Below, in pieces: positions 1 to 47,524 of a stretch of DNA of 64,000 nucleotides. The notes beneath the pieces are model-generated. The model saw only the letters and a list, made by a program, of their open reading frames with translations, had not been told where the DNA came from and did not search any database. Each line of letters begins with the position of its first letter. Position 1 is the stretch's first letter. This DNA comes from Monocercomonoides exilis PA203. Lineage: Eukaryota; Protista; Preaxostyla. The position numbers and the translations under genes are program-made. The stretch covers positions 372,001 through 436,000 of the forward strand of contig LSRY02000045.1 of assembly GCA_001643675.2 (NCBI GenBank). Reading direction: 5' to 3'.

Positions 1-3000
1 AATTTCACTCCTTTCACCCTCAATGTTCCTCCGCTTCCAACTGATATCATCATCCCTCCCCCTTTCATTCCACTTCCACCTGTGCATCTTGATGAAAAAT
101 TGCTTTCTTCAATTTTCACATTCCCATTATCCCCCATCCCAACATTCAAACATCCCCCTCCTCCATTTCCACCTGCAACTTCCACCTCCACTCCACTCAC
201 TCTGCTGTTCTTCAATTCCAATTGAACTCCACTTGTCATCGTTATTGGAGATTTCCCATTCGTCTTCAATGAACTTTCCATCACAAATCCATCAACAATC
301 AGATTCCCTCCTGCCATGCCAATGATGCTGTATCCGATCTTTCCATTGGTCAATGCCCCACTCTCAAATGAGACTGAACAGTTCGTCATACTGAGTGTTG
401 ATGTTGAATGGATGAATGCACTTCTCCTTGATTTCAACTGACCTTTCACAACAAATGAAAGTCGGCTCATTGTCACTGAACTCGAACATCCAACAAGCCA
501 ATCTTGTGTGGCTGATCCTCCATCACTCACATTCACCCCCATCCTCTCTCCATCGGATAACGCTATTCTGCCTGAAATTATCACACCAAATGATGATGGT
601 CCTGTTATTTCCTTGGCAATTGAAGAAGATGAGACAATTTCAATTTCATTCACAGTGCTGCTCATTCTTGAGTTCGCACAATAATCAACTGTCAAACACC
701 TGAATCCATCAAATCCACAATGACTGTGGTCCTTCCCATTTCCTCCACTCCCATCAACAAGCACTTTTGACCCCATTGTGCACAAATACACAAACAGTGG
801 AATCACACCATTTTCTTCCCCATTTTCGCATCCACTCAATTTCAACACATCTGATGGAATGGTGCTTGCGTCAAAAAATGCAAATGAGCTGGCATTCACT
901 TTTGAATCCAAAAACACTCCACTCCCACAACGAACAAACACATCCTTTCCATATGTTGCAACATTCCCATTCACTTTCGAAAACTTCACATCCTGCCCAA
1001 TTGTCAATCCACATCCTCCACTCTCCATCAACACAAACATCCCTCCTCCTCTCCCTCCATTCCCTCCATTATTCTCTGCCTTATTCCCATCAATCACACT
1101 CGTTCCACTCACAACCACTTTTCCGCTTCCCTTCAATCCAACATAGATTCCTCCTCCTTTTCCACCACCACAACTGCACCCATTCACATTGCATCCTTCA
1201 ACTGTCAACGTTCCACTCGACCCAACTGTTCCTTTCATCCATCCTCCATCTCCCTCATTCCTTTTGATTCCGCTGATATTGCATCCTGAACATATCACAC
1301 TCGTCATTCCTTCAGAAAATTCAATCGCTGAATGAGCTCCAAACACAAGTGCTCCACCAATCACAAATCGTTCCATTTTCAGACTCCCACCCTGCGCATT
1401 CACAATGCTGTATCCAAAGGCCACACTCGATGTGCTCTCTGATATATGAGCAACTGAGCAGTCTGTGAGTGTGAGTGATGAGCTTGTCAAAACAATGAGC
1501 GATGTTGCACTTGACAACAGAAATGGAATTTGGAATGCAATGTTCTTTATTGAGCTTGCACTCTGAACATTTATCAAACACGAAGATGTCATTCCACTCG
1601 GCACCCTCACATTCACATTTGTCTTGTTAATCCCACAATACACCTCCCATTCATATGACCCGGCCATCGACACAACCTCTCCCAGCTCAAACCCTGAATC
1701 CAACACAATGTTCTTCTTTGACGAACTGAATCTGTTCTGTGAAGCAAACGCGATCGTTTTGCATGGAAAATACCCAAACCCACAAAACCACGAGTCATAT
1801 CCTCCATACCCATTCACCTTATTCCCCACATGTGCTGCTCCTGAAAATGTGTCAAAAAACACATTCAATGGGAATATTCCCATCCCTCCCTCATTCCGAT
1901 CATATCCCATCAACTCATCATAAATAGATCCATTGTGTCCAACATTCAGCTTTGTGGTTGTTATTGTCCCACTCACCAGCCTGCTCCCATTCACAAACAC
2001 ATCTTTCCCTCCCAATGTTGCACTGCAACCAATAAAACTCACTGATGTTATTGTAAAATCGAATGAGCTATCTGCCAGCCATAGCATCACCCCTCCTCCA
2101 TATCCACTGCACTTCGTTTTGTTGAATTTTGTTGTTCCTCCGCTGTGCGATGCTGATGATCCAATTCTAACTTGACTTGAAGAAGACGCCAACTCAACCT
2201 TTATCCCTCCTCCATTCCCATTCACACACTCACATCCTTCTATTGTTGTATTCCACACCACAAATGTCTCCCCACCCTTCACGCTTTTTGCCATCACCAC
2301 TCCATCCCCTGTTGTCCGATTCACATTCCGAATTGTAACATTACCCAGCAAACTCTCTCCTGATGATGATCCGGCTGATGATGGTTCAGCGAAAAGAGGC
2401 TGACTCATTTTTATATTTTTGATCTCAATATCAATCATCTTCAGCTGATTCAGCGCAACATCTAACACAGATGCTGATATAACACTTCCTCCAGTTGTAC
2501 CTGAGATCACCACATCCTCCAGTGAAAGAGTCCCGCTCCCCAGTGACACCACAAACACACTCGGCGATGGGCTTCTTGTCGCGTTGTGGTCGATCCCCAC
2601 ATGCCCCACCTCCAGTTGACCAGATGATATGCTAAACAACGTTGTCGAAGAGGTCGAAAGCGCACTCGTCCCAATCACACTCACTGTCTTCCCTCTCCCA
2701 ACAACAGAAATCTCCTTTTCCCCAACATTGATCGTCGCCCCTTCGCTCACATGCCTTCCACTCAGCACTGTGATTGTCGAGCTCAACTGCGCCATGCTCG
2801 AACTCACTGCATGCCCCACTGTCTTGCACGGTGTTGCCTCACTCATCCCACACAGATTGTTTGCGTCGTTCCCACCCACTCCAACAAATCTATCCTTCAT
2901 CCCTTCCTTCAACCATTCCTTTTTTTCTGTATGCTGATAACCATTATAATAATAGCACACTCTCTTATCATTGCTATTCGTTGTATACGATTCATAGAAC

Positions 3001-4583
3001 GGGTTGTATGACGAAAAGAGATTGTTAGCATCTCGAAAATACACATCGTGCCCATATGGAGTGGAATTACTGCAACTGCAATCATGGAAGAAGAAGAAAT
3101 AGCAATAAAGGTTGTTGCTTGGAGGTGTTGACTGATATGGCCTGAAATCCAATCCTCCGCCATATGACACTGCTGAACACGAAATGAACTGGAGGCTCCT
3201 CATTTTGAATGCAGCTGGAACATATGAGCAATACATCCCTCCGCCACTTGAACCTGTAAGAGAACACGAAGTGAATGAGCACTCAAACACACAAGCACTC
3301 TCTCCATTGCCGTTTTCTGTTCCAATACAATTGGATCCAGAAACATTAAAAGATACAAGATAAAGTCCTCCTCCATAACCACTTACTTTGCATTTCTGGA
3401 ACTCGCACCCACTGATCCTGACACATGACGAAATTGATAGAGCATATATCCCTCCTCCATAATTATTTTTTGCAGTACAAGCATTGAATGAGTTGTTCTC
3501 AATCTTGATGGAATTAATTGTATGACACATAATTCCTCCTCCTCGACTGTATGCAGTACAGTCGTTGAACGAACAAAATTTCACTGAAAGTGTTCCCGAT
3601 GCCTTGTTGTACATGTTAATAGCACCTCCACTCGATATTCCATCTGAATAAGAACTACTTGTTCCAGTTGTATTTGAGCCATTCCATACACACCAAGTGA
3701 ACGAATTCGTTAAATCTGTAGAAATTTGCTGTCTCACTGGTTTCGATGGATTCCCTTCACTCCCGCTGACTGCAACATTCTGAGACCGATAGCACCTGAC
3801 AAATGAGGTGTTCGAGGCAGCCAAGGATGATGAGGGGCTGTTCAGCGAGGGGACAATGCCCCCATCATACACATCCCACACTGACACAAATTCACATCCA
3901 CTCATCAGAAATGATGTTTGGCCCAGCCCTTCACCCAGATGTGTTGTTTTCGATGGATTTGTGGAGATGTTGAAGAAGGTCAGCTGGGTGAGAGATACAA
4001 GGCGTGTCAATGGAGGTGCCAGAAACGGGGCTGAAGACACACAAAAAGATGAGAAATCTGACTCACTCACCAATACACTCCCTCCTCCTTCACTTTCTTC
4101 TTCGCTTTCTTCTTCTCTTCCTTCTCCACCTCTTCTTCCTTCACCACCTCCTCGTTGTTCTCCTCTCTCTCCTACTTCATCTCTTCCGCTTCCTCTTCCC
4201 CATCCTCCTCCTCCTCTTCCCCCACCTTCTCTCTCACTCCTCGTCTGCCCCATCCTCCCCTCTCCTCCAAACAGCCTTCCAGAGTATATTTCTCCCCCTC
4301 TTCTCCACCCTTTCAATGTGATGTTTGTCAACACCCCAATGCTCCCACTCAGATCAAATGCCCCTGCACCATCATCCTTCCCCATCCCCACAACACACCC
4401 CCTCACCACAACCACGCTCCCTTTCCTTCCACACACCAAACAACAATTATCATCATTCTCCAATGATATTTGATTTAACTCAACTGATGCATTTTTAACC
4501 ACTAAACTCCCTTTAAACACACTCACATCACTTACTGCTTTAACACATGACGCGATTCCCACAATAAACAACAAACTCAACAT
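1..4583 (-). CDS. Large secreted/surface right-handed beta-helix (Pmp/pectin-lyase-fold-like) protein, copy A; 3' end beyond window
   Basis: ATG at 4583 reads MLSLLFIVGIASCVKA (signal-peptide-like). The frame is absent from the ORF track, consistent with no stop before the window edge (>1520 aa). Manual translation of ~4100-2350 gives repeated GG[AG][ILM]Y..F..C units and CGMSEATPCKT, colinear with ORFs 37938-39707 and 45296-47524. Confidence 0.88.
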   Translation of the reverse strand, partial: MLSLLFIVGIASCVKAVSDVSVFKGSLVVKNASVELNQISLENDDNCCLVCGRKGSVVVVRGCVVGMGKDDGAGAFDLSGSIGVLTNITLKGWRRGGEIYSGRLFGGEGRMGQTRSEREGGGRGGGGWGRGSGRDEVGERGEQRGGGEGRRGGEGREEESEEESEGGGSVLVSESDFSSFCVSSAPFLAPPLTRLVSLTQLTFFNISTNPSKTTHLGEGLGQTSFLMSGCEFVSVWDVYDGGIVPSLNSPSSSLAASNTSFVRCYRSQNVAVSGSEGNPSKPVRQQISTDLTNSFTWCVWNGSNTTGTSSSYSDGISSGGAINMYNKASGTLSVKFCSFNDCTAYSRGGGIMCHTINSIKIENNSFNACTAKNNYGGGIYALSISSCVRISGCEFQKCKVSGYGGGLYLVSFNVSGSNCIGTENGNGESACVFECSFTSCSLTGSSGGGMYCSYVPAAFKMRSLQFISCSAVSYGGGLDFRPYQSTPPSNNLYCYFFFFHDCSCSNSTPYGHDVYFRDANNLFSSYNPFYESYTTNSNDKRVCYYYNGYQHTEKKEWLKEGMKDRFVGVGGNDANNLCGMSEATPCKTVGHAVSSSMAQLSSTITVLSGRHVSEGATINVGEKEISVVGRGKTVSVIGTSALSTSSTTLFSISSGQLEVGHVGIDHNATRSPSPSVFVVSLGSGTLSLEDVVISGTTGGSVISASVLDVALNQLKMIDIEIKNIKMSQPLFAEPSSAGSSSGESLLGNVTIRNVNRTTGDGVVMAKSVKGGETFVVWNTTIEGCECVNGNGGGIKVELASSSSQVRIGSSASHSGGTTKFNKTKCSGYGGGVMLWLADSSFDFTITSVSFIGCSATLGGKDVFVNGSRLVSGTITTTKLNVGHNGSIYDELMGYDRNEGGMGIFPLNVFFDTFSGAAHVGNKVNGYGGYDSWFCGFGYFPCKTIAFASQNRFSSSKKNIVLDSGFELGEVVSMAGSYEWEVYCGINKTNVNVRVPSGMTSSCLINVQSASSIKNIAFQIPFLLSSATSLIVLTSSSLTLTDCSVAHISESTSSVAFGYSIVNAQGGSLKMERFVIGGALVFGAHSAIEFSEGMTSVICSGCNISGIKRNEGDGGWMKGTVGSSGTLTVEGCNVNGCSCGGGKGGGIYVGLKGSGKVVVSGTSVIDGNKAENNGGNGGRGGGMFVLMESGGCGLTIGQDVKFSKVNGNVATYGKDVFVRCGSGVFLDSKVNASSFAFFDASTIPSDVLKLSGCENGEENGVIPLFVYLCTMGSKVLVDGSGGNGKDHSHCGFDGFRCLTVDYCANSRMSSTVNEIEIVSSSSIAKEITGPSSFGVIISGRIALSDGERMGVNVSDGGSATQDWLVGCSSSVTMSRLSFVVKGQLKSRRSAFIHSTSTLSMTNCSVSFESGALTNGKIGYSIIGMAGGNLIVDGFVMESSLKTNGKSPITMTSGVQLELKNSRVSGVEVEVAGGNGGGGCLNVGMGDNGNVKIEESNFSSRCTGGSGMKGGGMMISVGSGGTLRVKGVK

Positions 4584-4869
4584 CTCGTCAAATTTGTGTC
4601 AACCTCGCCAAATAAATATCTTTATAATATAATTGATCATTTTTGATCAATTTTACCATCGATTTATTTCTATTTTTCCTTTCATTAACTTATCTTTTAT
4701 ATTTAAATTTCATTTTATTTTTCATTTTCCTTTAAAAATTACTTCCATACTTAAGTATGAAATTGCTGGATTTATACCCCGTGCCACCTGCCAATCCAAC
4801 ACAAAGAGAACAGTGGAAGGTAATTTTCAACCACCTTCCCCCCCCAATGTTCCCCCCCCATGAGAAATT

Positions 4870-6287: not shown

Positions 6288-6466
6288 TGGGGTGAAATTT
6301 TTGCAATTGTGAAAAAAACTGAGATTAGTTCCAAACTTTTTCTGCATTCTTTTCATAATTATTTAAACATTTTCATTGGGAAAAAAAGTTCAAATATTAT
6401 CCAGCTTGGAAAAATCTTTGAAAGCTTGAATGTAACAAAATTCATAAAGCAAAAAATTTCGTCCCA
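6288..6466 (-). mobile_element. ~180-bp MITE (TGGG...CCCA family 1)
   Basis: Imperfect TIR TGGGGTGAAATTTTTGC / GCAAAAAATTTCGTCCCA; reverse-complement homolog at 27326-27506; flanked by AT/AT. Confidence 0.75.
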
Positions 6467-6822
6467 ATTCATCTTTGCCAATATTAATTTTCAAATAATG
6501 GATTTCATATTTCTTCTTAAATTTTTCTTTTTTTCCAAACTTAATCTCTCAATCAACACATTTTTTCCTTTTCATTAACTTTTTGCACATTTATTTTTTG
6601 AACCTAACAACGAACCCTCCAAATGACAATGGCTCAAAAAGCATCTTTGTTCCGATATTTCTTCATTTTCACTAATACCTCCATCTGAACATTGTTTTTC
6701 ATAGAATTTCACAACTCTATAACTTTTTTAATAAAAACATTCAAATCATCATCTCCCTTTCTTTCTCTTTTCTTCCATTTCTTTTGCTTTCTCTCCCCTT
6801 CAAACCCTTCGCACTCTTTCTC

Positions 6823-9800
6823 CTATTCTTCTTGTATTATATCGCCATTATACTTCCATCCAATATTTGGAACTTCCATTATTCCCTTAATTGCACTTTG
6901 CTCTTCTTTTTCTATTTCTCCTTTCAGCACGCTCTTTTCTCCTTTAACTCTTTTATCGATTTCTTTATCTCCTTTTGTTTGAAGACTGCTTTTGTTCTTC
7001 ATGACGAAACTCTCTGTTGAAGATGCTGTTTCATCTCCAAATAAAATAGACACAGATATTTCTGTTTCTTCTTCGTCCCATTCAGATAATGACAGGTCAA
7101 TTTCGTAACAAATTTCAGTCTCGTTGATATAATCCTCTTTGCTAAACTCCTTCAAAACTTCTTTTTCATCTCCTCTTTTGAATATTATTTACATCGACAG
7201 ATTGCAAGGCATCAAAAGTTGTCCCAAGCATGTTATTTTCATCACATTTCCCTCTTTCGTTGTCTTCACTTCTTCAATAATGGGGATAAAGAAAGGAGAT
7301 GATACTTCAGAAATAATTCCTTTTAAGAGCGCAACCTTCGCTCAACATCCAAAATGAGGCGTTATCCTTCATTCCATCTCCTCCTTTCACGCTCTTCACA
7401 TTCAACGTGCTTCCATCTGAACACAAAATGTTGCGTCGAAGAGAAGGATAGCCGGAAACAAATGGATTGTTGTTCTGAAACATCCCCAGTTCTATCGTAA
7501 CAGTCGAGTTAGACAGAGAAATCGCTCCTTGGGAGAAGTTCTCAAATAAAGTGTTGCTTATATTCACTGTGCTTTCTACAAAGTTGATTGAAGAGCTGCT
7601 CCATTCCCACACAAAACCAGTTTCTTCGCCAGTTTCTTCGTTTTCATTCACTTTTGAATGAATATTCCGTCCATTTTGGCTTCTCGTTTCTGCAACACCA
7701 CAAAATGAGCTCTTTTCTATTGAAACACTTCCACACGAGGTCAAATCCAAATAGCTTCCTCTTTCGCGCTGCCCGCTGATGTTGCTGAACACACACGAGT
7801 CAATCAGAATGCGGCTGTTCCAACTGGCTGCCTTCACAGCTGCTCCTTCCGAATGCTTCAGCTGCACATCCCTCACTTCACACAGAACCAACTCAAACGG
7901 CGTATCGCCACTTTCATCGGCTGCCTTGTAAAATTCAGAATTTAACTCAAAATTATCCGATTCTTCATTGAAAAGAGAAGAAAGAGAAGAAGAAGAAGAA
8001 AGAGGAGGAGGCAGAAGAGCAAACAAGCATCCTTCTTCCACAGTCACTTGGCTGATAGAAACTTCTCTCAGCACAAAAGATGCTGCCATTTCGGCGGCAA
8101 AGGCAGACGAGTGCGAAGAGAGCGAAGAGACGTTGCACCGCTTCACTTCCACTTTGCACCCGCTTTCTGCAGACAGCACACCGCAGCACTCGAAAACATG
8201 CTCTATGCAAATGTCTGCCAGCACAGCCACGCTGCCGCCAGACACAGAAATGAGAGAGTTCGCAGATGACTCGAAGGAATTGGGAGATTGAGAAGAAGAA
8301 GAAGATGATGATGAAGATGAAGATGATGAAGAATCGGAAGATGTTATGAAAGAAACAGAACAATCTTCTATTCTCAGTCCGCTGGCTGTCAGAGACGACG
8401 ACTCGCACTTGATGACATGAGCCGACTGCGAGGCATCGCCCGACACGACAAATAAAGATAGCTCTTTGAAGCAGACACCAATCAACTCCACAGCAGCACC
8501 AAAGCAGGCCTCAATGAACGAATTCCCTGCTTCTGGCTCAAATGAAGACAACGAAGAAGAAGAAGAAGAAGAAGAAGACTGAGCAAATTGCTTTGCTCCA
8601 AATGTTTCTGCTGATGGCTGCTGCCTCGATGCCTGCAAGCGGATGGCCGAGAACGAAACATTGCTCAAACACAAACAATGACTCTCAACACAAATTACAG
8701 TATTTGCCAGCTGCGCCGGCTCTTCTGACGTGATTGTGCAGTCGCCCAGCGTCAGATTTCCGCTCCTCACGCCAAAGACAGAGCGATGCGCAGAAGCGAA
8801 GCTGGGGCCGAAGACGATGTCCATCCCCAAAATGCTGCACTCCTCAGACGAAGACACCACACAATCCGCACTTCCATCCGTCCGAGCGATTTCGGAGTTG
8901 AACTCAAAAACAGCTGGGCTGCCTCCGACTGTCTGCACTGTCGCTGATGAAATGGCTGTCTCTGCTGAAACAGCTGCCTTCTTCACCACCAGCACGTTCT
9001 GGTACGGCTCGTCGTTCAGATGCCGCACAGCCTCGCTGAGTGTCTCACACGGGTCTTCCCTTCGCCCACAGTCCTTCTCGTTCTTCCCTTTCTCTCCCGA
9101 CACAAATATCCGCTCTGACTTGTAGAACACAATAAATGGCACCAAATCAATCGGCTCCTTCTTCACTTTGTCCATCCCGAAGATCGCATTTTCTCTGTCA
9201 AAGGCCAACTCGCTGAAGTCCATCACAAACAGCGCCTCATTGATCTGCTCAGCAATCGATCGGCAGACAATGTAAAGATCCTTCGCCACACTCGCTCTGT
9301 TCAAAGAAAACCGAATCAGCCGAAATTTGATTGGCAGCGCCTTCGCTTTCTCCGAAGACTGTGCATCTGAATCTTCTGGATCGTCCAGGCAGCTCAATGC
9401 AATTGCGCCTCCTCTGCCTTCACTCGTTGAGCACGCACATGTCACAAAAGACGACAGATTCGCCAGCACACTGCCTTCATTTGCCCAGCTGTCAGCCAGC
9501 CCGCCCGCCTTCTCCTTCATCCACACACAAAACGCCCCTCCCAGCTGAGACTCGCTGTTGCAGTCGCTGAATGTCGAGTTGTCCATCGTCAGCGCCACAG
9601 ACAGTGCACTCTCATAAGAAATGATCGATGCCTTCGCACTTGTGCTGCGGATGAGATGCCACTGAAGATTCCCCAGTCTGATTTCGCTCGCTTCTTTGCC
9701 CGCTTTCGTTTCTTTGCCATTCCCTGATAAGACTGATTCCTCATCCCCCTTCTCTTCTGCATCGCCCACAGAAATAAACGATCCTTCTGCAAAATTCAGA

Positions 9801-35300: not shown

Positions 35301-36010
35301 TCACAAACGAATATTTTCTAAAAACAAAAAAATATCTTCTATTAAGAACTTTATCCACAACATCCCAATTGAGAATACTTCCGATTCCTTTGACTCCCCC
35401 ATATTCTTGTTGATCAGCAGCGCGGGCGCCTTCCACCTCAGGCATTCTTTTTTGTAATAATCTTCATCTTCAAAGGCAGAAGAAGGCAGAGAATCATCAT
35501 CGTCGTCGTCGCTTGTAGAAGTCACAACTGTTGATGATGAGATGGATAATGATGAATCATCAGACAAGAAGTCTGAATGCATGACAACGCAGATCACCAT
35601 GTGCTCAGAGAACAACACAATATGAGGACTCAGATTGGCAAGAGATTGAAGAGGATTTTCCATTTCATCAAATGAGTAGAAAGCTCCATTTGCCACACAG
35701 AACAGGATATGAGCTGCTGTCTGCTCCCTCTCCTGCAGAGTGCAAATTGCCATCTCTTTCTTCTCGTTCATCCCATGTTGCAGCATGAACAACGAATCCT
35801 TTGAGTAAGCAATCAGTTTTTCATGAGGAGACGAGCAATCCTTTGTATATACAAAGATCGAAATGGATGAGAAAGAGGGTACAAATCTTCTTCTTTACAA
35901 AAGTTGTTTCTGTGTCAGCCGAGAAAATTGAAGGTGATAGTGTTTGCTTTCTTGTCTCTTCTTCCTCAACTTCCTCCAATGCCCATTCAGCGACTTTGTG
36001 TGGATATTTT
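35301..36010 (-). pseudogene. Cytoplasmic pseudokinase fragment of the beta-helix receptor family (cargo)
   Basis: NLSPHIVLFSEHMVIC..DDDSLPSSAFEDED..KKECLRWKAP, closely similar to 18900-19300. Confidence 0.88.
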
Positions 36011-36347: not shown

Positions 36348-36384
<37 letters not shown>

Positions 36385-37096: not shown

Positions 37097-37362
37097 TGGG
37101 GAAGAATATTTTCCTTCAGGCATTTTCATTGAAATATTATGCACTTTTCATTAACTTTTTGAGAACAAAAAACACAATAAAAACACGTCGATTTATTGAA
37201 ATTCGTAAAATGACACAACAATTTTTGATTTGATTTCAACGATGCCTGTTTAAGGATATGAAAATCAAATTTATTTTGAAATCTGAGAATGCCAAAGTTA
37301 TTAGTGAAACAATTTTTTTGTGCTTTGTGCATAAAAAGCTTGAAAGTCCGTATTTTGCCCCA
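37097..37362 (-). mobile_element. MITE family 2, inverted copy
   Basis: Reverse complement of 23129-23398 (shared TTCAGGCATTTTCATTGAAA, AAAATCAAATTTATTTTGAAATCTGAG, TGCTTTGTGC); CT/CT flanks. Confidence 0.8.
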
Positions 37363-37937: not shown

Positions 37938-39707
37938 TTAAAAAAAAAGAAGTGACGTTGGCAAATCGAACTGCTTATTTGGGTTGAAGGAAAAAAAGTT
38001 GGCTGATTTGTTCTTTATTCTCTTCTCAGCAAAATTTCCCAAAAATAATAATACCTGAAAATATTTGCCTTTCATTTGCATCTCCACCTTCTTTTTCTCA
38101 TTTTCCTCAATTATCATCATCTTCTTTTCCCCAACACTGATTGTTGAATTTTCGCTCACATGCCTCCCACTCAGCACTGTGATTGTCGAGCTCAGCTGCG
38201 CAATGCTCGACCCCACTGCATGCCCCACTGTCTTGCACGGTGCTGCCTCACTCATCCCACACAGATTGCTCGAATCATTCCCACTCACCCCAACATACCG
38301 ATCCTTCATCCCTTCCTTCAGCCAATCCTTCTTTTCTGTATGCTGATATGCTCCATTTACCCAATAGCACACTCTCGTATCATCACTATTCGTTGTGTAC
38401 GATTCATAGAACGGGTTATTCGAAGAAAAGTGATTGTAATAATCTTCAAAATACACATCGTGGCCATACGGAGTGGAAGTTGTTGTACATCTGCAATCAT
38501 GGAAGAAGAAGAAATAGCAATAAAGCTTGTTGCTTGGAGGTGTTGATTGAGATGGCCTGAAATCCAATCCTCCGCCAACTGACACCGCTGTGCACGAAAT
38601 GAACTGGAGGCTCCTCATTTTGAAAGCAGATGGGACACCATAACAATACATCCCTCCGCCATATTGACTTGTTAGAGAACACGAGGTGAAGAAACATTCA
38701 AACACACAAGCACTCTCTCCTTTGCCGCTTTCTGTTCCAATACAGGAAGATCCAGAAACATTAAAAGTATGAAGATAAAGCCCTCCTCCATAATTAACTG
38801 CTTTGCATTTTTGAAATTCGCAACCACTGATCCTGACACATGTTGAAATGGAATAGGCATACATTCCTCCTCCAGCACTATTTTTTGCAGTACATGCATT
38901 GAACGAATTGTTCTCAATCTTGATGGAATTTATTGAAACGCAAAAAATTCCTCCACCATAAGCATATGCATAGCAGTCATTGAACGAACAAAATTTCACT
39001 GAAAGTGTCCCAGCTGCCAGATTATACATATTAATTGCACCTCCATTCGAAGCCCTATCAGCCGTAGAAGATGACGTTCCAGTTGTATTTGATCCATTCC
39101 ACACACACCAAGTGAACGAATTCGTCCCATTGTCTGTAATCTGCTGTCTCGCTGGTTTCGATGGATTCCCCTCGCTCCCGCTGACTGCAACATTCTGAGA
39201 GCGATAGCACCTGACAAAAGAGGCGTTCGAGGCATCCAGGGAAGATGAAGGGCTGTTCAGCGAGGGGACAATGCCCCCATCATACACATCCCACACCGAT
39301 GAAAATGAGCACCCACTCATCAGAAATGATGTTTGGCTCGGCCCTTCACCCAGATGTGTTGTTTTCGATGGATTTGTGGAGATGTTGAAGAAGGTCAGTT
39401 TGGAAAGAGATACAAGGGGTGCCAGGGGAGGTGCCAGAAACGGGGCTGATGAAACACAAAAAGATGAGAAACCAGACTCACTCACCAGAACACTCCCTCC
39501 TCCTTCGCTTTCTTCTTCTCTTTTTTCTTCTCTTCTTTCACTTCCTCTTCCTCCACCTCTCTTTCCTCCGCTCTCTCCTCCTTCATCTCTTCCTCTTCCT
39601 CCTCCACCTTCTCTCTCGCTCCTCATCTGCTCCATCCCTCTCAATAAAATATTTCTCAAAACCCCAAAAATCATGCAACCCCTTTCCCTCCTCTTTCTGC
39701 TGCTCAT
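37938..39707 (-). CDS. Truncated open-frame paralog of copy A (copy B): variable beta-helix head only
   Basis: 589-aa ORF highly similar to A and C. No signal peptide; homology ends abruptly at ~38119 (TISVGEKK). Confidence 0.8.
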   Translation of the reverse strand: MSSRKRRERGCMIFGVLRNILLRGMEQMRSEREGGGGRGRDEGGESGGKRGGGRGSERREEKREEESEGGGSVLVSESGFSSFCVSSAPFLAPPLAPLVSLSKLTFFNISTNPSKTTHLGEGPSQTSFLMSGCSFSSVWDVYDGGIVPSLNSPSSSLDASNASFVRCYRSQNVAVSGSEGNPSKPARQQITDNGTNSFTWCVWNGSNTTGTSSSTADRASNGGAINMYNLAAGTLSVKFCSFNDCYAYAYGGGIFCVSINSIKIENNSFNACTAKNSAGGGMYAYSISTCVRISGCEFQKCKAVNYGGGLYLHTFNVSGSSCIGTESGKGESACVFECFFTSCSLTSQYGGGMYCYGVPSAFKMRSLQFISCTAVSVGGGLDFRPSQSTPPSNKLYCYFFFFHDCRCTTTSTPYGHDVYFEDYYNHFSSNNPFYESYTTNSDDTRVCYWVNGAYQHTEKKDWLKEGMKDRYVGVSGNDSSNLCGMSEAAPCKTVGHAVGSSIAQLSSTITVLSGRHVSENSTISVGEKKMMIIEENEKKKVEMQMKGKYFQVLLFLGNFAEKRIKNKSANFFSFNPNKQFDLPTSLLFF

Positions 39708-40697
39708 AAAAGGAATCTTATAAATGATGTAAAAGAACCTTCGCTGTCAATGTCTTTTTATAATGATGATCCTATAAAGCTCTTTCCCAAGTTGAATCCG
39801 CTCATTGTCCTTCACTTTCTATCGTCTGATGTTATTCTGCATTCCTTCGTTATTTTTGGAAGACAGTCTCAAAAATATTTTTGTCCAAGCAGGTGAAAAG
39901 AAAAAATCAATAAATCATGCCAAAAAATCGGTCAAATAATATAATTAATAAAAATATCATACCTTTTTTATCCTTCAATCTCGCCAACTTTTGTCAAAGA
40001 ATCGCTGCATTCCTCGTTTACTCGTCCCTTCCGTTATCTCCGGCAAAAGCAAACCCTTCTGAAACAGACGCAGAGCGTGACCTCTATCTTCAATCCATTT
40101 ATGCTGATTAATATTCCGAGGTATATTTCCATCTCCTTTTTTGAATTTTTCTTAAATTTTTGAGTCATTCGCTCTTTAAAGCCAATCACCTCAATTTTTC
40201 ACCAAAGTCCCTTTTCTCTTTCTTCTTCTTCATGCCCTCCCTCATTTCATATTACCATTTCATTTCCTTCTTTTGGCTCTTCTTCGAATGTTCCAAAAAA
40301 TTCATTCTTCTAATTCCTCTTCTTTCCTTTCTTCTTTTCTTATTTCCCTTTTATCATTCATTTTCAATCACTTTTCTTTTAAATATCTTCTTTTTCTTCT
40401 AAGTTTTTTGTCAATTTTTTTCTTCTGCCGCATCATCAACATTTGTTTCCCTCGTTTTTGCTTCTAACATGATTCACCAGATACGCCTTCCAAAACCATC
40501 AAAGACCTCCTCCTCTATTCGCTTCAATTTTTGCTCCTTCCCATTCCACCAAACACTCTCCAATTATTATCTCCAGGTTTCTTAAAGGCTCCAAATATGC
40601 ACTCTTTCCATATTCCTTGTTCATTCATCGACATCGAACACTCGTTAAAAAAAATCCTTGTTTCATTAAAAAAAATTATATAATAATATACAGTGAT

Positions 40698-40786
40698 AAA
40701 AAAGCAAACCTATGACTTTTATACGAATAATCTTTGCAAACTTTCTTCTCCTCCAAATATCGTTCCTTTCTACCAACAAAACCCAT
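40698..40786 (-). repeat. ~90-bp block upstream of copy B, inverted homolog at 44769-44864
   Basis: GCAAACCTAT..CTTTTAT...CTCCTCCAAATATCGT.CCTTTCT.CCAA.AAAACCCAT shared in reverse complement. Confidence 0.8.
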
Positions 40787-43700
40787 CTGTCCCTTCTTCG
40801 TTTCCTTTCTGCCCCCAAAAATCGTTCATTTCCAATCCTCGGTACTGCTTCCACTCAAATAACTCAGCCAGCTCCATTCAATAAAAAAACTAGCAATGAA
40901 GAAGATTCCATCTGAAGAGCCCCTTTCCATCCCTTTCTTCTGCATCACCTTCTTCTTCTCTCCATTTCCCCTCAAAGCAACATCAACACCCCTCCACCAC
41001 ATATCCTCCATCTCCTCCACTTCATTCCTCATCATCCTTTTCCCAATCAAAAATATAAATGACTCCAATATTTTGCCTCTCTTTGGTGCAAAACACCCCC
41101 TCATGGTCAGCCCCTCACCTCGCTCCATCCCTGTCGCGAATCCATCCCCACACCCCCACTGCAAAGTGCTGCGCCTGACGTTCCTTCTTCCTGTCTTCCT
41201 CCGCCTCAGATTCCATCCCTTGCCCTGCAAATGTGAGGCGCGTCCAAACAGTTCACAAAATAAATTATATAAAAATATGAAAACTTTTCTTTCATTTTTC
41301 TTCTTCTTCAACCCCACTTCCCTCTCTTATCAAACGATCATCCACAAATACTCTTCCTCTTGCTCTGCCTCATGTGCCTCCTCCTTCTCTCGATACATAA
41401 AAAAAAATAATCCCTTTTCCATCTTCTCCCTATATCTCTTCAACTCTCATCTAACTCTTGTCCTCCCTTCCAATAAGCATATTCCATTCACTCCACCCTT
41501 CTTATCTTCCCTCTCACCCCACCTCCTCCACATCAAATTCCATTTCTCCAGCAATAAACACGACATCCACGCCTTCCCAATGACAAAAATCGAAAAAACA
41601 ATCTCTCAGCGCTTCATCCCAATCTATCCCCCACACATCCATTTTGCCTCTTAAACCTCACAAAAATACCTCTTTCTCCCCCAAAAAACATCCTTTTGTC
41701 GTTCCTTTCCCCCTCCAAAACCCTGTTTATTCTCAATTGAACAAATCCATCACCCCGTACCACAAATCCATTCTTTTGTAATCGCGTTGTCTTCATATGC
41801 CCATTCAGCAACGACACATCGAGTTGTGCCCCTTTTCTTGTGTGACTCTTATTCGTTATGGAACATGATCAAGCAAATCTCAAATGCTCAAGAAATATCT
41901 ACAGAATGAAAATTTCATGTGACCAAAAATGCAGCTGGGCTAAATGAAATATTTCTAGTGATGAAAAAGCAGCAGCAACAACAACTCTTTTTTTATTGAT
42001 GGAAGATGAATTTGTTCATATTGATTGATGGAATGCTGTGGAGCAACAACATTTTCGATGTGAATGTGAAATTTTTAATGTATGTATTTTATATTGTTCT
42101 GTTGATTGTGAAGATATTTCCATCCGTATCCTCTCCAAAGTCGTGATTCAGGCAAATTATTTATAATTGACAATTTATTCTTTGCAGAGGAGAACAGCGA
42201 GGAAGGGAGCCAAATGTTATCTTACAAATATATCATTGGAGCCTGAATATATTTTATCATAAATATTTATGTGACTTATTATAAACTCAACATGCGCGAT
42301 GGATAGAAATTCGATGAAGAATAAATTTTGATGGAGCAGAAATCAAGGGGGTTGAAAGACTTCCAAGGCCAAAAGGAAGAACAGCCAAATTCAATGAAAA
42401 GGGAACGTTTTTTAATGAGGATGGGATATTTTCAGAAAATTTTTTGTTGGAAAGATTGGAGCAAATGACTGAAACAGGAGATTAGCAGCAGTTGGGACAG
42501 AACAAGGCGCCTTTCTTTGGAGAAGAAGGGCAAGACATTGATTTTATGGAACGAGGAGAGGGGTTGAATGGCATTTGATTGCTTGGGTTGAGAGCCAAAA
42601 ATGCGAGAAAATCAGAAAGTTTTGCGTTATACAGGTTGCTTGGAGTGGATAACAGGAAAAATTGACTTGGATCATTTGATCTTTGTCTTCAGCCTTGTGT
42701 CATCGAAGGATTTGCAGCTGGAGCAGAGAACGAGGTTGTTATGTTGAGGATATCTTCCAACAGAAAGTACTGACGATTGAACTCAACATTATCTTCATTG
42801 TCTTCTTCTTCTTCTTCTTCTTATTCATTGACTTCTTCTTTGTTTCCGTCTTCACCACCGAGAAATACGAAATTATTTTTCCCCCTGATTTTTGTTCATC
42901 ATTTTCTTCACCTTCTTCGCCATGTTCGGTCTTGTCTTCTTCACCCACTTCTATCTCATTTTTTCCATCATCATCTTCATCTTCTAATTCTTCTTCACCC
43001 AACACCTTCACCAACACCACCACATCCTTCTCCTTCTCCTTCTCCTTTGGCGAGCTGACTGAGCGACATGTTCATCTGAATGAGGGTGTCAGTTCTGGGA
43101 GTGTTTGCAGGGCTGGTTCACAGGCAGTTGATTTGGGGTTGAATGTGGAGCATGTTTCATTTGGTGTCAGCAGCCGTTCACAGCCGCTTTTTGGGGAAGA
43201 GGGGAAGAGAATGTTGGAGGGAAAAGGCAAGAGATCGATTGCATTCACATCGTCGCTCTCCTTTTTGCCAGCTGTTCAACCATCTTCATCGTCATCGTCA
43301 TCTTCTTCTTTTGCTTCTGCTTGCAGCCTGTGGGCAATGAGGCATTTTTGAGGAATGGAGATGAAAGAGGTGGGCAATGCAGGGCATTGGTGGAGCGAGA
43401 GATGGAAATGGCAGTTTGTGTTGCTTGGAGCAGAGAGCGAGATGAATGAGAGAGAAGAGAAGAAAGAGAAGGAAGAGAAGAAAAAGAAGAGGAAGAAGCA
43501 AAGGGGAAAGAAGTGATGTTCATTTCTGTCTTCTCTTTTCCGATGAGGTCAGCCACCCGCTGTGCAGCATCTGCCTTCTTCGTTCAGCATTGAGCACTCA
43601 GCAAACCGGGTGAAGATACACATCATCTCTTCCCTTCTCCTCTGTCACACCGACGCCACACCGACACCACTGCAACGCTGCAGTCACATCCATCGGGTGG

Positions 43701-44768
43701 TGTCTGAAGAACACGGGGGGTTCCCCTTTTGCCAAGCGATGGCAGCACAGCAGCAACAACAGCGGCAGATTGTGCATGGGGTAGCTGTGGAGCGGTTTCC
43801 GCAGGAGCGACTGGCCAAGCATCTCCGGCACGATGTTCGCCTCCTCTGCCGCGTTATCTCTTGTCAGGATGGCCTCGCGCAGCTGGTCATTGCCCTTTAT
43901 CTTGCCGGGGGATGGAACATCGGGCTGTGTGCTGGCAGCACAGCCACTTTGTTTGATGTGTCATGAAAGGGCGAGAGGACTTTTAGGAGAAGACTGCTGC
44001 GATGGGAGAAGCCGTTCACCAGAGAAATAATTTACAAGAGGAGTGAAGAGGACGAGCTGTGTGGAGGATGAGAAGGGAAAGAGGAGGGGAAGGAATTTTT
44101 TGGAAGAGGGTGAGAAAGATGAATAAAAGGAGAGGGGTGTTGTTTTCGGAGAATATTGTGAGGTGGATGGAGGAGGAGAATAACAAAGACAAGAAACTGA
44201 GAGCAGCCATCGCTCTGGAATTGTGAGGGGAAAGGGGAGGGCAATGGCGAAGAAAAGGCAGAGGAATGAGCAGTGGATGGCCGGGCGTGGTGATTTGGAT
44301 GGAAGGATCAGGCACAACATTTGGGAATGAGATTTTGTGAAGAGTTTGAAGTAAGCAGTGGAAATGGGATGTTTTGGGGGGATATTCAAGATCTTATGAA
44401 ATATGATTGAATTGCGAAAAGAATTGTTTGTCACACCATTTATTCGCCTTCTTCAATTTGAATTACCTTTTCTTCTTCATTTTCTTCTTCATCTTCATTA
44501 TCTCCATTATCACCATCATGTTTTCGTTTGCACCATCTCAACAAATGAAGGTGTTTTTATGTGAAATCTTGATTATTGTCATTTTCGCCTTCATAGCCTT
44601 CGACAAGTCTGAGCTTTCCCTAATTTGACTGCTTCTTCATTTTCATCTTCACCTTCGATATTTTTAAGAAAAGGGTTTGTAGAGATTATTTGAGAAGAAG
44701 CAACAAGAAGTTGGACTTTGGCTGTTTATTTTTTTTGAAAAATTAGATGCGAAATGAAAATGGTGCAA

Positions 44769-44864
44769 ATGGGTTTTATTGGCAGAAAGGGACGATATTT
44801 GGAGGAGGAGAAGGAAGTTTGAGAAGAATGATCATCATAAAAGATATAGGTTTGCCACTTTTTT
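44769..44864 (+). repeat. ~95-bp block upstream of copy C, homolog of 40698-40786
   Basis: ATGGGTTTTATTGGCAGAAAGGGACGATATTTGGAGGAG...ATAAAAGATATAGGTTTGC. Confidence 0.8.
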
Positions 44865-45295
44865 CAATGTTCTTTTTCATGGATTATTATTTTTGTTGAA
44901 ATTAGAATATTTTTTCAGGTATATTTACTGCGAATATATGCCTATAGAATATGGAAAAAGAGGATATAAAATGCATTAAAGAAATCAGGAAATAATAATT
45001 GAAGGGGCGCATATGGAAATGAGCAGGTGCAAAATATAAATGAAATGAAAAGAAGATTTTTTTTTTTTAGGCTTTGGAATACATATAGGACGAATCATGT
45101 TAAAAGCCGAAAATGAGATCAAGGAATTGATGATGTGGCAAAAGAAGAAATTTAGCAAATAATTGAGAAGAAGATATTTTTGTGGAAGTTCGATTGAAAG
45201 AGAAAATTTGAATAAGGCGAAGAAAGAATGGAAGGGGAAAATCATAGATATGATTTTTTAGAGACATTTGAAGAAAAGTTGGAAAAAGGAAGAAG

Positions 45296-47524
45296 ATGAG
45301 ATATTTTTTTGTGAGGGAGTCATTGAACCCGTCGGTTGAGTTAAATCAAATTTTATTGGAGAATTATGATAATTGTTGTTCAGTGTGTGGAATGAGGGGG
45401 AGTGTGGTTGTGGTGAGGGGATGTGGTGTGGAGATGGGGAGAGGCAAGGAGGCAGGGGTGTTTGAGCTGGGCGGGTGCAGAGGGGTGTTTTGGAACATCA
45501 CGCTGAGAGGGGTTGGAAGTGGAGGAAATGTGTGTGGGAGACTGTTTGGGGGAGAGGGGAGGATGGGGCAGAAGATGAGTGAGAGAGAAGGTGGGGGAGG
45601 AAGAGGAAGAGTCGGATGGGGAAGAGGAGGAGGTAGAGGTAAAGGAGGAGAGAGAGGAGGACAAGGAGGAGGCGGAGGAAGAAGAGGTGGAGAAGGAAGA
45701 GAAGAAGGAAGAGAAGAAGAAAGCGGAGGAGGAGGGAGTGTATTGGTGAGTGGGTCGGATTTCTCATCTTTTTGTGTGTCTTCAGCCCCGTTTCTGGCGC
45801 CTCCCCTGACACGCCTTGTATCTCTTTCCAAACTGACCTTCTTCAACATCTCCACAAATCCATCGAAAACAACACATCTGGGTGAAGGGCCGAGCCAAAC
45901 ATCATTTCTGATGAGTGGGTGCTCATTTTCATCGGTGTGGGATGTGTATGATGGGGGCATTGTACCCTCACTGAACAGCCCCTCATCATCCTTGTCTGCC
46001 TCAAATACCTCATTTACCAGGTGCTATCGCTCTCAGAATGTTGAAGTCAATGGGAGTGAGGGGAATCCATCGAAACCAGCGAGACAGCAGATAACAGACA
46101 ATGGGGCAAATTCGTTCACCTGGTGTGTGTGGAATGGCTCAAATACAACTGGAACGTCATCTTCTACGGCTGATAGGGCTTCGAATGGAGGTGCAATTAA
46201 TATGTATAATCTGGCAGCTGGGACACTTTCAGTGAAATTTTGTTCGTTCAATGACTGCTATGCATATGCTTATGGTGGAGGAATTTTTTGCGTTTCAATA
46301 AATTCCATCAAGATTGAGAACAATTCGTTCAATGCATGTACCGCAAAAAATGATTACGGAGGAGGAATGTATGCCAGATCTATTTCGTCATGTGTCAGGA
46401 TTAGCGGTTGCGAGTTCCAGAAATGCAAAGCAAGTGGTGCTGGAGGAGGGCTTTATCTTTATACTTTTAATGTTTCTGAAACTGCCTGTATTGGAACAGA
46501 AAATGGGAAAGGCGAGAGCGCTTGTGTGTTTGAGTGCTCATTCACTTCGTGTTCTCTAACAAGTCAATATGGCGGAGGGATGTTTTGTCAAAATGTTCCA
46601 GCTGCATTCAAAATGAGGAGTCTCCAATTTATTTCGTGCTCAGCAGTGTCAGTTGGTGGAGGATTGGATTTCAGGCCATATCAATCAACAGCTCCAGGCA
46701 ACAACATTTATTGCTATTTCTTCTTCTTCCATGATTGTAGATGCACAACAACTTCCACTCCATATGGCCACGATGTGTATTTTGAAGATCGATACAATCT
46801 CTTTTCATCGAACAACCCATTCTATGAATCGTACACAACGAACAGCAATGATAAGAGAGTGTACTACCAATATTATAACGGAAACAATTGGGTGTATCAG
46901 GAAACACAAAAGAAGGGCTGGCTGAAGGAGGGGATGAAAGATAGATATGTTGGGGTGAGTGGAAATGATGCGAGCAATCTGTGTGGGATGAGTGAGGCAG
47001 CACCGTGCAAGACAGTGGGGCATGCAGTGGGGTCGAGCATGGCACAGCTGAGCTCGACAATCACTTTGCTGGGTGGGAGGCATGTGAGCGAAGAGAAGAC
47101 GATCAGTGTTGGGGAAAAGAAGATTTCTGTTTTGGGGAGAGGGAAGGCAGTGAGTGTGATTGGAACAAGTGCGCTTTCGACCTCTTCGACAACGCTGTTC
47201 AGCATATCATCTGGCCAACTGGAGGTGGGGCATGTGGGGATCGATCACAACGCGACAAGAAGCCCATCGCCGAGTGTGTTTGTGGTGTCACTGGGGAGCG
47301 GGATTCTTTTGCTGGAGGATGTTTTGATCGACTCTTCGAAATCAGGAGGGAGTGTTATATCAGCATCTGTGTTTGAAGTGGCACCGAGGCAGCTGAAGAC
47401 GATTGATGTGGAGATAAAAAATATGAAAGTGAGCCAACTTCTGATAATCGAGCCATCATCAGCAGGACAACATTGGGAGAATATTATTTGTTGTTTATTT
47501 TATTTTGAGTTCATGGCACACTGA
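45296..47524 (+). CDS. Truncated open-frame paralog of copy A (copy C)
   Basis: 742-aa ORF; homology to A starts at SVELNQI (after A's signal peptide) and ends abruptly at ~47467 (EPSSAG). Confidence 0.82.
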   Translation: MRYFFVRESLNPSVELNQILLENYDNCCSVCGMRGSVVVVRGCGVEMGRGKEAGVFELGGCRGVFWNITLRGVGSGGNVCGRLFGGEGRMGQKMSEREGGGGRGRVGWGRGGGRGKGGERGGQGGGGGRRGGEGREEGREEESGGGGSVLVSGSDFSSFCVSSAPFLAPPLTRLVSLSKLTFFNISTNPSKTTHLGEGPSQTSFLMSGCSFSSVWDVYDGGIVPSLNSPSSSLSASNTSFTRCYRSQNVEVNGSEGNPSKPARQQITDNGANSFTWCVWNGSNTTGTSSSTADRASNGGAINMYNLAAGTLSVKFCSFNDCYAYAYGGGIFCVSINSIKIENNSFNACTAKNDYGGGMYARSISSCVRISGCEFQKCKASGAGGGLYLYTFNVSETACIGTENGKGESACVFECSFTSCSLTSQYGGGMFCQNVPAAFKMRSLQFISCSAVSVGGGLDFRPYQSTAPGNNIYCYFFFFHDCRCTTTSTPYGHDVYFEDRYNLFSSNNPFYESYTTNSNDKRVYYQYYNGNNWVYQETQKKGWLKEGMKDRYVGVSGNDASNLCGMSEAAPCKTVGHAVGSSMAQLSSTITLLGGRHVSEEKTISVGEKKISVLGRGKAVSVIGTSALSTSSTTLFSISSGQLEVGHVGIDHNATRSPSPSVFVVSLGSGILLLEDVLIDSSKSGGSVISASVFEVAPRQLKTIDVEIKNMKVSQLLIIEPSSAGQHWENIICCLFYFEFMAH

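What the first reader, a model, noticed from the sequence alone, without database searches (positions are those of the whole stretch)
1..47524. Candidate cassette-type diversification system: one complete surface beta-helix gene plus two leaderless, anchorless but open-frame copies of its variable head
Seen: copy A (4583 leftwards) has a signal peptide and >1500 aa. Copies B (37938-39707, -) and C (45296-47524, +) lack the signal peptide and stop abruptly shortly after the head domain. Both nonetheless have no stop or frameshift across it, while other family members nearby (6.8-19.7 kb, 35.3 kb) are decayed. Knowledge: the layout of a complete expression gene plus truncated donors is how Borrelia vlsE/vls, Neisseria pilE/pilS, trypanosome VSG pseudogenes and chicken Ig pseudo-V genes work. 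Inference: B and C may be silent donors for segmental gene conversion into full-length beta-helix surface proteins/receptors of this protist.
Basis: partly seen in the sequence, partly recalled or inferred. Interest (0 to 1): 0.88.

Follow-up and report, generated by a model that had tools for sequence, protein, structure and literature searches.

The report
Mosaic archive of truncated receptor heads
In the gut protist Monocercomonoides exilis, B and C are two of about fifty cut-down but still readable copies of the outer "head" of a family of giant receptor-like surface proteins. These copies trade short DNA patches with each other and with full-length genes, as parasite antigen-gene archives do, but nothing yet shows that the cell does this on purpose.

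Summary
A, B and C are paralogs (77-80% amino-acid identity), and B and C are truncated, leaderless and fully open. The "one gene plus two donors" picture is too local. The window is M. exilis contig C42. The family encodes beta-helix receptor proteins of about 4,400 aa with a kinase-like tail. Of the 91 best head matches genome-wide, about 50 are head-only open frames, mostly in palindromes on C42, and about 40 are long genes.

Head-only copies are not decaying. 84 of the 91 heads have no stop, against 1-4% expected for a neutrally evolving copy, and dN/dS is about 0.28. Segmental gene conversion is pervasive:
- B and C share an exact 203-bp tract.
- A's head is a chain of exact 94-161-bp tracts matching five different head-only copies.
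- A and two tandem long copies have bodies identical over at least 9.3 kb (A and copy2 over about 11 kb) but heads only 79-94% identical, switching at aa ~630, where B-type heads end.

Exchange runs both ways, because head-only copies also receive patches. There are many long genes. A shares no notable tract with B or C. Silence is unproven, since RNA runs hold about a quarter of the words of C's stretch.

Verdict: a VSG/var-like mosaic family; programmed cassette switching is not shown. The scan found this family before on other DNA (s1-463746, s1-471060, s1-466207).

The parts
1..4583 (-). Copy A: the first 1527 codons of a giant receptor-like gene. In the contig it continues to about C42:363500, for roughly 4,400 aa in all, with a transmembrane helix and a cytoplasmic tail.
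   Evidence: Sister copy2 gives a kinase C-lobe hit (PF07714) in the tail.
4470..4625 (-). A's signal-peptide segment plus a short 5' leader. It is a foreign piece, 95-96% identical to three loci on contig C53 and absent from all other C42-type heads.
   Evidence: One search shows that none of the 40 best head matches reaches the leader-coding segment; one runs about 30 bp past the usual homology end at aa ~33.
2695..4490 (-). A's variable head (aa ~33-630). It is only 79-94% identical to the heads of copy2 and copy3.
3085..3686 (-). Chain of abutting exact tracts in A's hypervariable core. 3526-3686 equals the head-only copy at C42:20.7 kb (161 bp). 3334-3427 equals the copy at 130.6 kb (94 bp). 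3229-3335 equals copies at C42:514214 and 519848 (107 and 101 bp). 3085-3222 equals the copy at 442.8 kb (138 bp).
1..2694 (-). A's body. It is identical to copy2 and copy3 except for one patch, a 4-bp change at 888-891, one substitution at 1032 and homopolymer length differences. The identity runs on outside the window, at least 9.3 kb with copy3 and about 11 kb with copy2.
1899..2061 (-). A 163-bp patch in A's body with 25 differences from copy2 and copy3, yet 99% identical to a paralog on another contig (C80:1925363-1925543). This is an ectopic conversion tract.
37938..39707 (-). Copy B, a head-only open frame of 589 aa. Homology to A spans 38119-39627. The 60-codon tail (37938-38118) is unrelated to A but is shared by at least 7 other B-type copies on C42 and C71, several of them inverted pairs.
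45296..47524 (+). Copy C, a head-only open frame of 742 aa (A aa 31-738) with a short hydrophobic tail. Its 5' end, tail and 3' flank are shared by at least 10 other C-type copies.
38890..39092 (-). B's side of the exact 203-bp tract shared with C. It spans 118 consecutive polymorphic sites against an 11% divergent background.
46139..46341 (+). C's side of the exact 203-bp tract shared with B.
42787..45295 (+). C's 5' flank, 88% identical to the 5' flank of the full-length copy2 (C42:309742-312344). The leaderless start (MRYFFV...) is therefore shared by a long gene.
40264..40804 (.). B's 5' flank, 67% identical in inverted orientation to C's 5' flank (44751-45291). B and C are the arms of an old, eroded palindrome.
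6952..11893 (-). Headless body plus membrane-proximal part of a divergent family member.
12219..19335 (+). Divergent long paralog with head, body, transmembrane part and cytoplasmic tail, split over at least 4 frames.
35385..35879 (-). Isolated fragment of the cytoplasmic tail (59% aa identity to A's).

Best explanation
B and C are non-autonomous gene fragments, not a private pair of donors for A. They belong to an M. exilis-specific family of giant type-I receptor-like proteins of about 4,400 aa. Each has a signal peptide, an N-domain, a Gly/Glu/Arg-rich linker, a hypervariable right-handed beta-helix head (aa ~170-630), a long beta-helix stalk, a transmembrane helix and a kinase-like tail.

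One subfamily, concentrated on contig C42, holds about 40-50 head-only copies. These arose when already truncated units were copied by segmental duplication, often palindromic. Three or more truncation classes are shared by descent: B-type at aa ~628, a second class at aa ~660, and C-type at aa ~746.

All heads, truncated or attached to a body, exchange patches of 40-500 bp by ectopic homologous recombination (gene conversion). The conserved blocks flanking the hypervariable core serve as homology anchors. This exchange makes every head a mosaic. It also keeps truncated copies free of stops, because imported tracts come from a pool that selection on the long genes keeps in frame. It lets identical bodies carry unrelated heads.

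Shown here: the truncation classes, the palindromes, the mosaic tracts, the open frames, the dN/dS values and the head/body switch point.

Inferred: the mechanism is homologous recombination; the fragments act as a passive reservoir of head variants on an evolutionary time scale; and A's leader came from a C53-type gene by recombination.
For: Identity and family:
- The best 120 listed protein hits (of 132 with E<=0.001) are all M. exilis.
- The window is C42:372001-436000.
- The fold is a beta-helix.
- The tail has a transmembrane helix and a kinase C-lobe.
- Open frames in relatives reach 4,494 aa.

Fragments by descent:
- B's non-homologous tail and C's ends recur in many copies, often as inverted pairs.
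- Large palindromes have spacers of 156-187 bp.

Not decaying:
- 14 of 14 head-only copies in the sequence I read have no stop or frameshift.
- 84 of 91 heads genome-wide have no stop, against 1-4% expected for a neutral copy.
- dN/dS is about 0.28 with dS 0.27-0.5.

Conversion:
- 41 of 105 pairs have significantly long identical runs.
- 63% of A's polymorphic sites lie in runs identical to a single other copy, against 1% when site order is shuffled.
- Exact tracts match head-only copies.
- A's 163-bp body patch matches a C80 paralog at 99%.
- Palindrome twins differ only in discrete patches.

Modular joints:
- Bodies are identical over at least 9.3 kb while heads are 79-94% identical, with the last difference at window 2695, 15 bp from B's homology end.
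- Three different 5' flanks join the head at aa ~31-33.
Against: - Direction of transfer is unresolved. One case (copy2 and the 179k/185k twins) suggests fragment to long gene. Another (A and the 130k copy versus its twin at 126k) suggests the reverse, or a third donor.
- The very sharp contrast between identical bodies and fully mosaic heads could mean a much higher, perhaps targeted, conversion rate in heads.
- Transcription of B and C is unknown. RNA runs hold 20-26% of the words of C's stretch.
- Only 325 kb of C42 could be read.
- The assembly is Nanopore-based with reads of N50 8.9 kb (PMC8767320), so '100% identical' bodies may really be about 99%.
Confidence: 0.6

Rival explanations
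1. A true cassette system. Head-only copies are silent, dedicated donors, and recombination at the conserved head borders copies segments or whole heads into a few expressed long genes. This happens at high frequency during the life of a clone and gives phenotypic variation of the receptor head.
For: - There is a large excess of promoter-less, leaderless, anchor-less but open head copies on C42.
- A hypervariable core is flanked by conserved blocks.
- A's head is a chain of exact, hence very recent, tracts matching five different head-only copies.
- Identical bodies carry unrelated heads, and the switch lies at the place where B-type donors end.
- One A tract is shared by two head-only copies at 100% and by a copy on C37 at 98%. 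That is most simply explained if A was the recipient.
- A is the only C42-type head seen with a leader.
Against: - Head-only copies are themselves patched after palindrome formation.
- About 40 long genes exist.
- No head anywhere is more than 90% identical overall to A's or copy2's.
- A shares nothing notable with B or C.
- No within-culture variation was examined, and no recombination-initiating element was found.
Confidence: 0.12
2. B, C and their kin are genuine stand-alone genes encoding short head-only proteins. Protein-level selection, not exchange, keeps them open.
For: - dN/dS is about 0.28 and frames are open.
- Both are called as genes in the protein collection (P0001, P0014).
- C-type copies share a conserved short hydrophobic tail and 3' flank.
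- At least one head-only model in a divergent subfamily carries a leader (P0036).
- RNA runs hold part of C's stretch.
Against: - There is no signal peptide on a Cys-rich domain full of N-glycosylation sequons.
- C's ATG is not conserved in the 142k copy.
- Gene models simply start at the first available Met, which is A aa 67, 111, 227 or 324.
- No leader-like exon was found between B and C.
- 5' ends differ between truncation classes.
Confidence: 0.15
3. Assembly or polishing artefact. The exact tracts and identical bodies come from consensus bleeding between paralogs in a Nanopore/Pilon assembly.
For: The assembly's authors state that multi-copy parts may be poorly polished (PMC8767320). All differences among the three bodies beyond window 880 are homopolymer length changes. 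DNA runs hold only 44-64% of the words of the stretch.
Against: Heads differ by 11-16%, which is enough for reads to be placed correctly. Tracts of 500 bp and more exceed a single 300-nt Illumina read. Tracts respect the frame and recur in twins. Three distinct heads must each be physically joined to a body.
Confidence: 0.07
4. Ordinary birth-and-death. B and C are dead pseudogene fragments drifting neutrally.
For: They are truncated at both ends, lack a leader, and sit in repeat-rich DNA next to transposon-like sequence.
Against: Under neutrality 3-4 stops per copy are expected and about 90% of copies have none. dN/dS is 0.28. Recent exact tracts are present.
Confidence: 0.03

Closest known systems
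Trypanosoma brucei VSG archive and mosaic VSGs (PMC3708902)
   Same: A large genomic store made mostly of incomplete copies. Genes are assembled as mosaics of segments from several donors by gene conversion, with conserved borders as homology anchors.
   Different: Here the fragments carry no in-frame stops. No telomeric expression site, 70-bp-type repeat or monoallelic expression was seen. There are many long genes, and the mosaics are seen in the germline assembly, not during an infection.
Borrelia vlsE/vls and Neisseria pilE/pilS cassette systems (PMC9159922 for vls)
   Same: Truncated, promoter-less copies of the variable part of a surface protein lie near complete genes, and segmental conversion tracts are tens to hundreds of bp long.
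   Different: Those systems have one expression locus, strictly one-way transfer and unchanged donors. Here donors are also recipients and there are dozens of long genes.
Babesia bovis ves1 segmental gene conversion (PMC7485966) and Plasmodium var ectopic recombination (own knowledge)
   Same: All-against-all exchange of short tracts within a large family of giant surface proteins produces chimeric genes.
   Different: The protein fold differs. The palindromic head-only arrays are not a feature of those families, and the host is a commensal oxymonad.
Anaplasma msp2 'functional pseudogenes' and Mycoplasma synoviae vlhA (own knowledge)
   Same: Donors are truncated at both ends yet keep an open hypervariable core flanked by conserved sequence.
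   Different: Those are bacterial, with a single expression site. Donor-to-expression-site flow has been shown experimentally there and not here.
Right-handed beta-helix proteins: Pfam Beta_helix PF13229, Chlam_PMP PF02415, DUF1565 PF07602; PL6 lyases, phage tailspikes, antigen 43
   Same: The predicted fold is the same, with repeated GGG-containing rungs. One family member has a precomputed PF13229 hit.
   Different: A, B and C reach no Pfam threshold. TM-scores to solved structures are low (0.15-0.2). There is no sign of an autotransporter or of enzymatic residues.
M. exilis tyrosine-kinase-like receptor expansion (PMC6759080, PMC8767320)
   Same: The cytoplasmic tail of the long copies hits the kinase C-lobe. 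The papers report more than 300 TKL kinases overlapping 'unclassified repeats'.
   Different: Neither paper turned up the head-only copies, the palindromes or gene conversion in my term searches.

Membership tests
Dedicated cassette system (vls / pilS / msp2 type) | One or very few complete expression loci | tested here: not met
   About 40 of the 91 best heads sit in open frames of 1,068-4,494 aa on many contigs. Three long copies lie within 80 kb. A is, however, the only C42-type head seen with a leader.
Dedicated cassette system (vls / pilS / msp2 type) | Truncated, leaderless, open copies of the variable region | tested here: met
   B, C and 12 more in the 325 kb read, and about 50 genome-wide, about 90% of them without stops.
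Dedicated cassette system (vls / pilS / msp2 type) | One-way transfer from donors that stay unchanged | tested here: not met
   Palindrome twins of head-only copies differ in discrete imported patches. The direction of the A tracts is ambiguous.
Dedicated cassette system (vls / pilS / msp2 type) | Frequent switching within a clone | not testable with these tools
No subclone data are available.
Dedicated cassette system (vls / pilS / msp2 type) | Donors transcriptionally silent | tested here: inconclusive
   Four RNA runs of one study hold 20-26% of the words of window 43000-48500. Which part they hold is unknown.
Multigene surface family evolving by ectopic segmental gene conversion (var / ves / VSG-array type) | Statistically supported mosaic tracts among paralogs | tested here: met
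   41 of 105 pairs have p<=0.01. Tiling is 16-71% against 1-5% when shuffled. Exact tracts reach 528 bp.
Multigene surface family evolving by ectopic segmental gene conversion (var / ves / VSG-array type) | Exchange between different loci or contigs and between fragments and full genes | tested here: met
   A's body patch matches C80 at 99%. A's head tracts match head-only copies 60-350 kb away.
Right-handed beta-helix fold | All-beta solenoid model matching solved beta-helix proteins | tested here: met
   The model has pLDDT 80-96 over residues 110-400. The best Foldseek hits are PL6 lyases, tailspikes and Ag43, with probability up to 0.99 but low TM-scores. Atlas neighbours carry PF13229, PF02415 or PF07602.
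Pfam Chlam_PMP / Beta_helix families | Score above the Pfam gathering threshold | tested here: not met
   A, B and C have no family at E<=0.1 apart from a chance zinc-finger match.
Receptor kinase | Signal peptide, ectodomain, one transmembrane helix and a cytoplasmic kinase domain | tested here: inconclusive
   The transmembrane helix and a kinase C-lobe (PF07714 positions 160-257 of 258, 29.8 bits against a cut-off of 23.1) are present in copy2. No N-lobe was detected. The leader is judged by eye only.

The most novel reading that the evidence does not exclude
M. exilis runs a real archive-based diversification of its giant receptor heads. Palindromic arrays of open, leaderless head cassettes on contig C42 feed segments, bounded by conserved joints at aa ~33 and ~630, into a small set of leader-bearing long genes such as A, often enough to vary within a clone. 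That would be the first cassette-type variation system in a metamonad, in a commensal, and acting on a receptor-kinase-like protein.
Probability: 0.15. Interest if true: 0.85.

Novelty: new variant of a known kind. Interest (0 to 1): 0.6.

Why it matters
The family is absent from the two M. exilis genome papers, where it is probably hidden among "hypothetical proteins" and "unclassified repeats". It shows the genomic hallmarks of antigen-gene archives in a commensal oxymonad that is not known to need immune evasion:
- many truncated but open copies
- a hypervariable core between conserved anchors
- mosaic genes
- identical bodies carrying different heads

If the exchange is merely evolutionary, it is a clear new example of how gene fragments can stay "alive" through conversion and serve as a reservoir for receptor diversity. 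If it is frequent within clones, it would extend cassette-based variation to a new eukaryotic supergroup and to receptor-type proteins. The palindrome twins and the triplicated body give built-in clocks for dating events, which makes the system unusually tractable.

Tried and rejected
- **Read laying:** No read-level check of expression, splicing, assembly or heterogeneity was therefore possible.
- **The look-up of encoding contigs:** gave nothing, because records of this genome are left out.
- **Pfam on A, B and C:** nothing.
- **Whole-head donor:** rejected. No head is more than 90% identical overall to A's or copy2's.
- **Introns as the cause of A's frame changes:** rejected. They are 1-nt homopolymer differences, at different sites in each sister copy.
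- **Splice donors at the truncated 3' ends, or a leader exon upstream of B or C:** none convincing.
- **'Heads outnumber bodies genome-wide':** dropped. The membrane-proximal module has even more first-look candidates (1047), and about 40 long genes carry related heads. The excess of head-only copies is specific to the C42-type subfamily.
- **Directionality from flank-versus-tract distances:** ambiguous.

Full report
**What and where.** The window is Monocercomonoides exilis contig C42, bases 372001-436000. A search with C found 132 proteins at E<=0.001, and the best 120 listed are all uncharacterised M. exilis proteins. Pfam finds nothing in A, B or C. An AlphaFold model of C's head, built on 37 family members, is confident over residues 110-400 (pLDDT 80-96) and is all-beta. 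Its best structural matches are right-handed beta-helix proteins: PL6 lyases, phage tailspikes and antigen 43. Foldseek probabilities reach 0.99 but TM-scores are low. Language-model neighbours carry Beta_helix, Chlam_PMP or DUF1565.

**The observation.** A, B and C are as described.
- Protein identity is 77% for A/B and 80% for A/C.
- DNA identity is 85% for A/B, 84% for A/C and 89% for B/C.
- Homology to A ends at 38119 in B and at 47480 in C, with nothing A-like beyond.
- The reading frame has no stops, while the other two sense frames have 20-34, so the openness is not due to composition.

**What A really is.** A's open frame is 1882 aa. Four more long frames follow on the same strand. They end in a transmembrane helix and a cytoplasmic tail. 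The joints are single-base shifts, not introns.

Two sister copies lie in tandem at C42:296132-308036 (copy3) and at 312381 to beyond 326000 (copy2). Beyond window 880, every difference between them and A is a one-base homopolymer length change, at different sites in different copies. Where A is shifted, copy2 is open (a 3164-aa frame), and the reverse also holds.

The assembly paper reports Nanopore reads of N50 8.9 kb, polishing with Nanopolish and Pilon, and suspected poor polishing of multi-copy regions (PMC8767320). The gene is therefore probably one frame of about 4,400 aa. Relatives with frames of 4,317-4,494 aa fit this. Copy2's tail hits the C-lobe of the protein kinase fold (PF07714). 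These are giant receptor-kinase-like proteins.

**B and C are members of classes, not singletons.**
- B's 60-codon tail, which is unrelated to A, recurs in at least 7 other copies on C42 and C71.
- C's start, short hydrophobic tail and 3' flank recur in at least 10 copies.
- Many copies are inverted pairs. The part of C42 I could read contains palindromes with arms of 3.9-14 kb and spacers of 156-187 bp, and one 15-kb self-palindrome.
- B and C themselves are arms of an old palindrome, with 5' flanks 67% identical in inverted orientation.
- In 325 kb of C42 there are 14 head-only copies and 3 long ones.
- Among the 91 best head matches genome-wide, about 50 lie in frames of 428-849 aa, mostly on C42. 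About 40 lie in frames of 1,068-4,494 aa on many contigs.
- Annotated models show the same pattern. Head ends cluster at A aa 621-638, 658-695 and 721-731, even in subfamilies only 52-58% identical to A. The length filter of that search favours such ends, though.

**The fragments are not decaying.**
- All 14 local copies are free of stops and frameshifts.
- 84 of 91 heads genome-wide have no stop.
- Random substitution at 0.06-0.08 per site would leave only 1-4% of copies open, with 3-4 stops each.
- dN/dS is about 0.28 at dS 0.27-0.5 for all pairs. This includes pairs that share a truncation joint and so diverged after truncation.

**Gene conversion is pervasive.** In a Sawyer-type test, 41 of 105 pairs have runs of identical polymorphic sites that are reached in at most 3 of 300 shuffles of site order.
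- B and C share an exact 203-bp tract (B 38890-39092, C 46139-46341), spanning 118 polymorphic sites in an 11% divergent background.
- In A's head, 63% of polymorphic sites lie in runs identical to a single other copy. The figure is 1% when site order is shuffled.
- A's hypervariable core is a chain of abutting exact tracts:
  - 3526-3686 equals the copy at C42:20.7 kb.
  - 3334-3427 equals the copy at 130.6 kb.
  - 3229-3335 equals copies at 514 kb and 519 kb.
  - 3085-3222 equals the copy at 442.8 kb.
- Window 2700-2924 is 98% identical to a copy at 239 kb.
- All these partners are head-only copies whose overall identity to A is 85-87%.
- In A's body, a 163-bp patch is 14% diverged from the sister copies and 99% identical to a paralog on contig C80.
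- Palindrome twins give a clock. The 179k/185k pair differs at 8 sites, all within aa 281-299. The 142k/148k pair differs at 76 sites in two patches. Head-only copies are therefore recipients as well.

**Modular joints.** A, copy2 and copy3 are identical from window 2694 leftwards, over at least 9.3 kb for all three and about 11 kb for A and copy2. The only exceptions are the 163-bp patch, a 4-bp change at 888-891, one substitution at 1032 and homopolymer noise. Their heads are only 79-94% identical, with dS about 0.4. The last head difference is at window 2695 (aa ~630), 15 bp from the end of B's homology (2710).

At the 5' side, three unrelated flanks join the head at aa ~31-33.
- A's leader segment (4470-4625) is 95-96% identical to three loci on contig C53 and occurs next to no other C42-type head.
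- Copy2 shares C's leaderless start and 2.5 kb of 5' flank.

Heads and bodies have thus been recombined at conserved joints. Either the bodies were recently homogenised or duplicated, or the heads were recently overwritten. The exactness of A's tracts favours recent overwriting of A's head, but direction could not be proven.

**Reading.** Several specifics are not:
- B and C as donors for A
- one expression gene
- one-way flow
- silence of B and C

Transcription remains open. Four RNA runs of one study hold 20-26% of the sampled words of window 43000-48500.

The term searches I ran in the two genome papers, and a library search pairing Monocercomonoides with the variation terms, turned up no description of this family. 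Earlier agents of this scan reached a similar reading on other DNA of this genome. New here are the identical-body/different-head trio, the chimeric leader of A, and the exact tracts that link a long gene to head-only copies.

Noticed in passing
window 4630-6300, especially 5073-5577: The sense strand upstream of A is almost free of C (2-4% C) and has a 505-nt run with no C at all, which is G-free on the + strand. The family's coding strands are also C-poor (12-17%).
   Followed up: partly
C42:167-18155; 124682-132534; 138135-153325; 168396-196739 (loci L010-L029): Large palindromes with arms of 3.9-14 kb at 96-98% identity and spacers of 156-187 bp or about 5 kb. Each carries head-only copies.
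   Followed up: partly
window -8853 to 1100 (A) compared with L004/L007/L008: Beyond window 880, all differences among the three identical bodies are 1-nt homopolymer length changes, at different sites per copy. Each copy therefore looks 'frameshifted' in a different place. This is probably residual Nanopore error.
   Followed up: yes
L003:7300-8800 (C42:364300-365800): The membrane-proximal and transmembrane module has 1047 first-look candidates and at least 40 matches at 81-88% identity on more than 20 contigs. It is shared far beyond the C42-type subfamily.
   Followed up: no
L007:8300-9658: The cytoplasmic tail of copy2 matches only the C-lobe of the protein kinase fold (PF07714 positions 160-257). 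It may be a pseudokinase or have a very divergent N-lobe.
   Followed up: partly
window 6952-11893 (-) and 12219-19335 (+): A headless body copy and a divergent long paralog lie back to back, so 5'-truncated copies exist as well as 3'-truncated ones.
   Followed up: partly
window 39963-40031 (-): B's 5' flank encodes a 23-aa stretch 61% identical to the annotated first exon of MONOS_15443 (P0009), a head-only model with a predicted intron. This hints at a shared upstream transcription unit in B-type and 179k-type copies.
   Followed up: no
window 43000-48500: Four metatranscriptomic runs of one 2024 study hold 20-26% of the sampled words, so some part of C's neighbourhood is probably transcribed. 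DNA runs hold only 44-64%.
   Followed up: no
window 37096-37362: A short repeat, 77-79% identical to four other places on C42 (291.3, 294.0, 395.2 and 442.0 kb), lies about 0.6 kb downstream of B's stop. Its nature is unknown.
   Followed up: no
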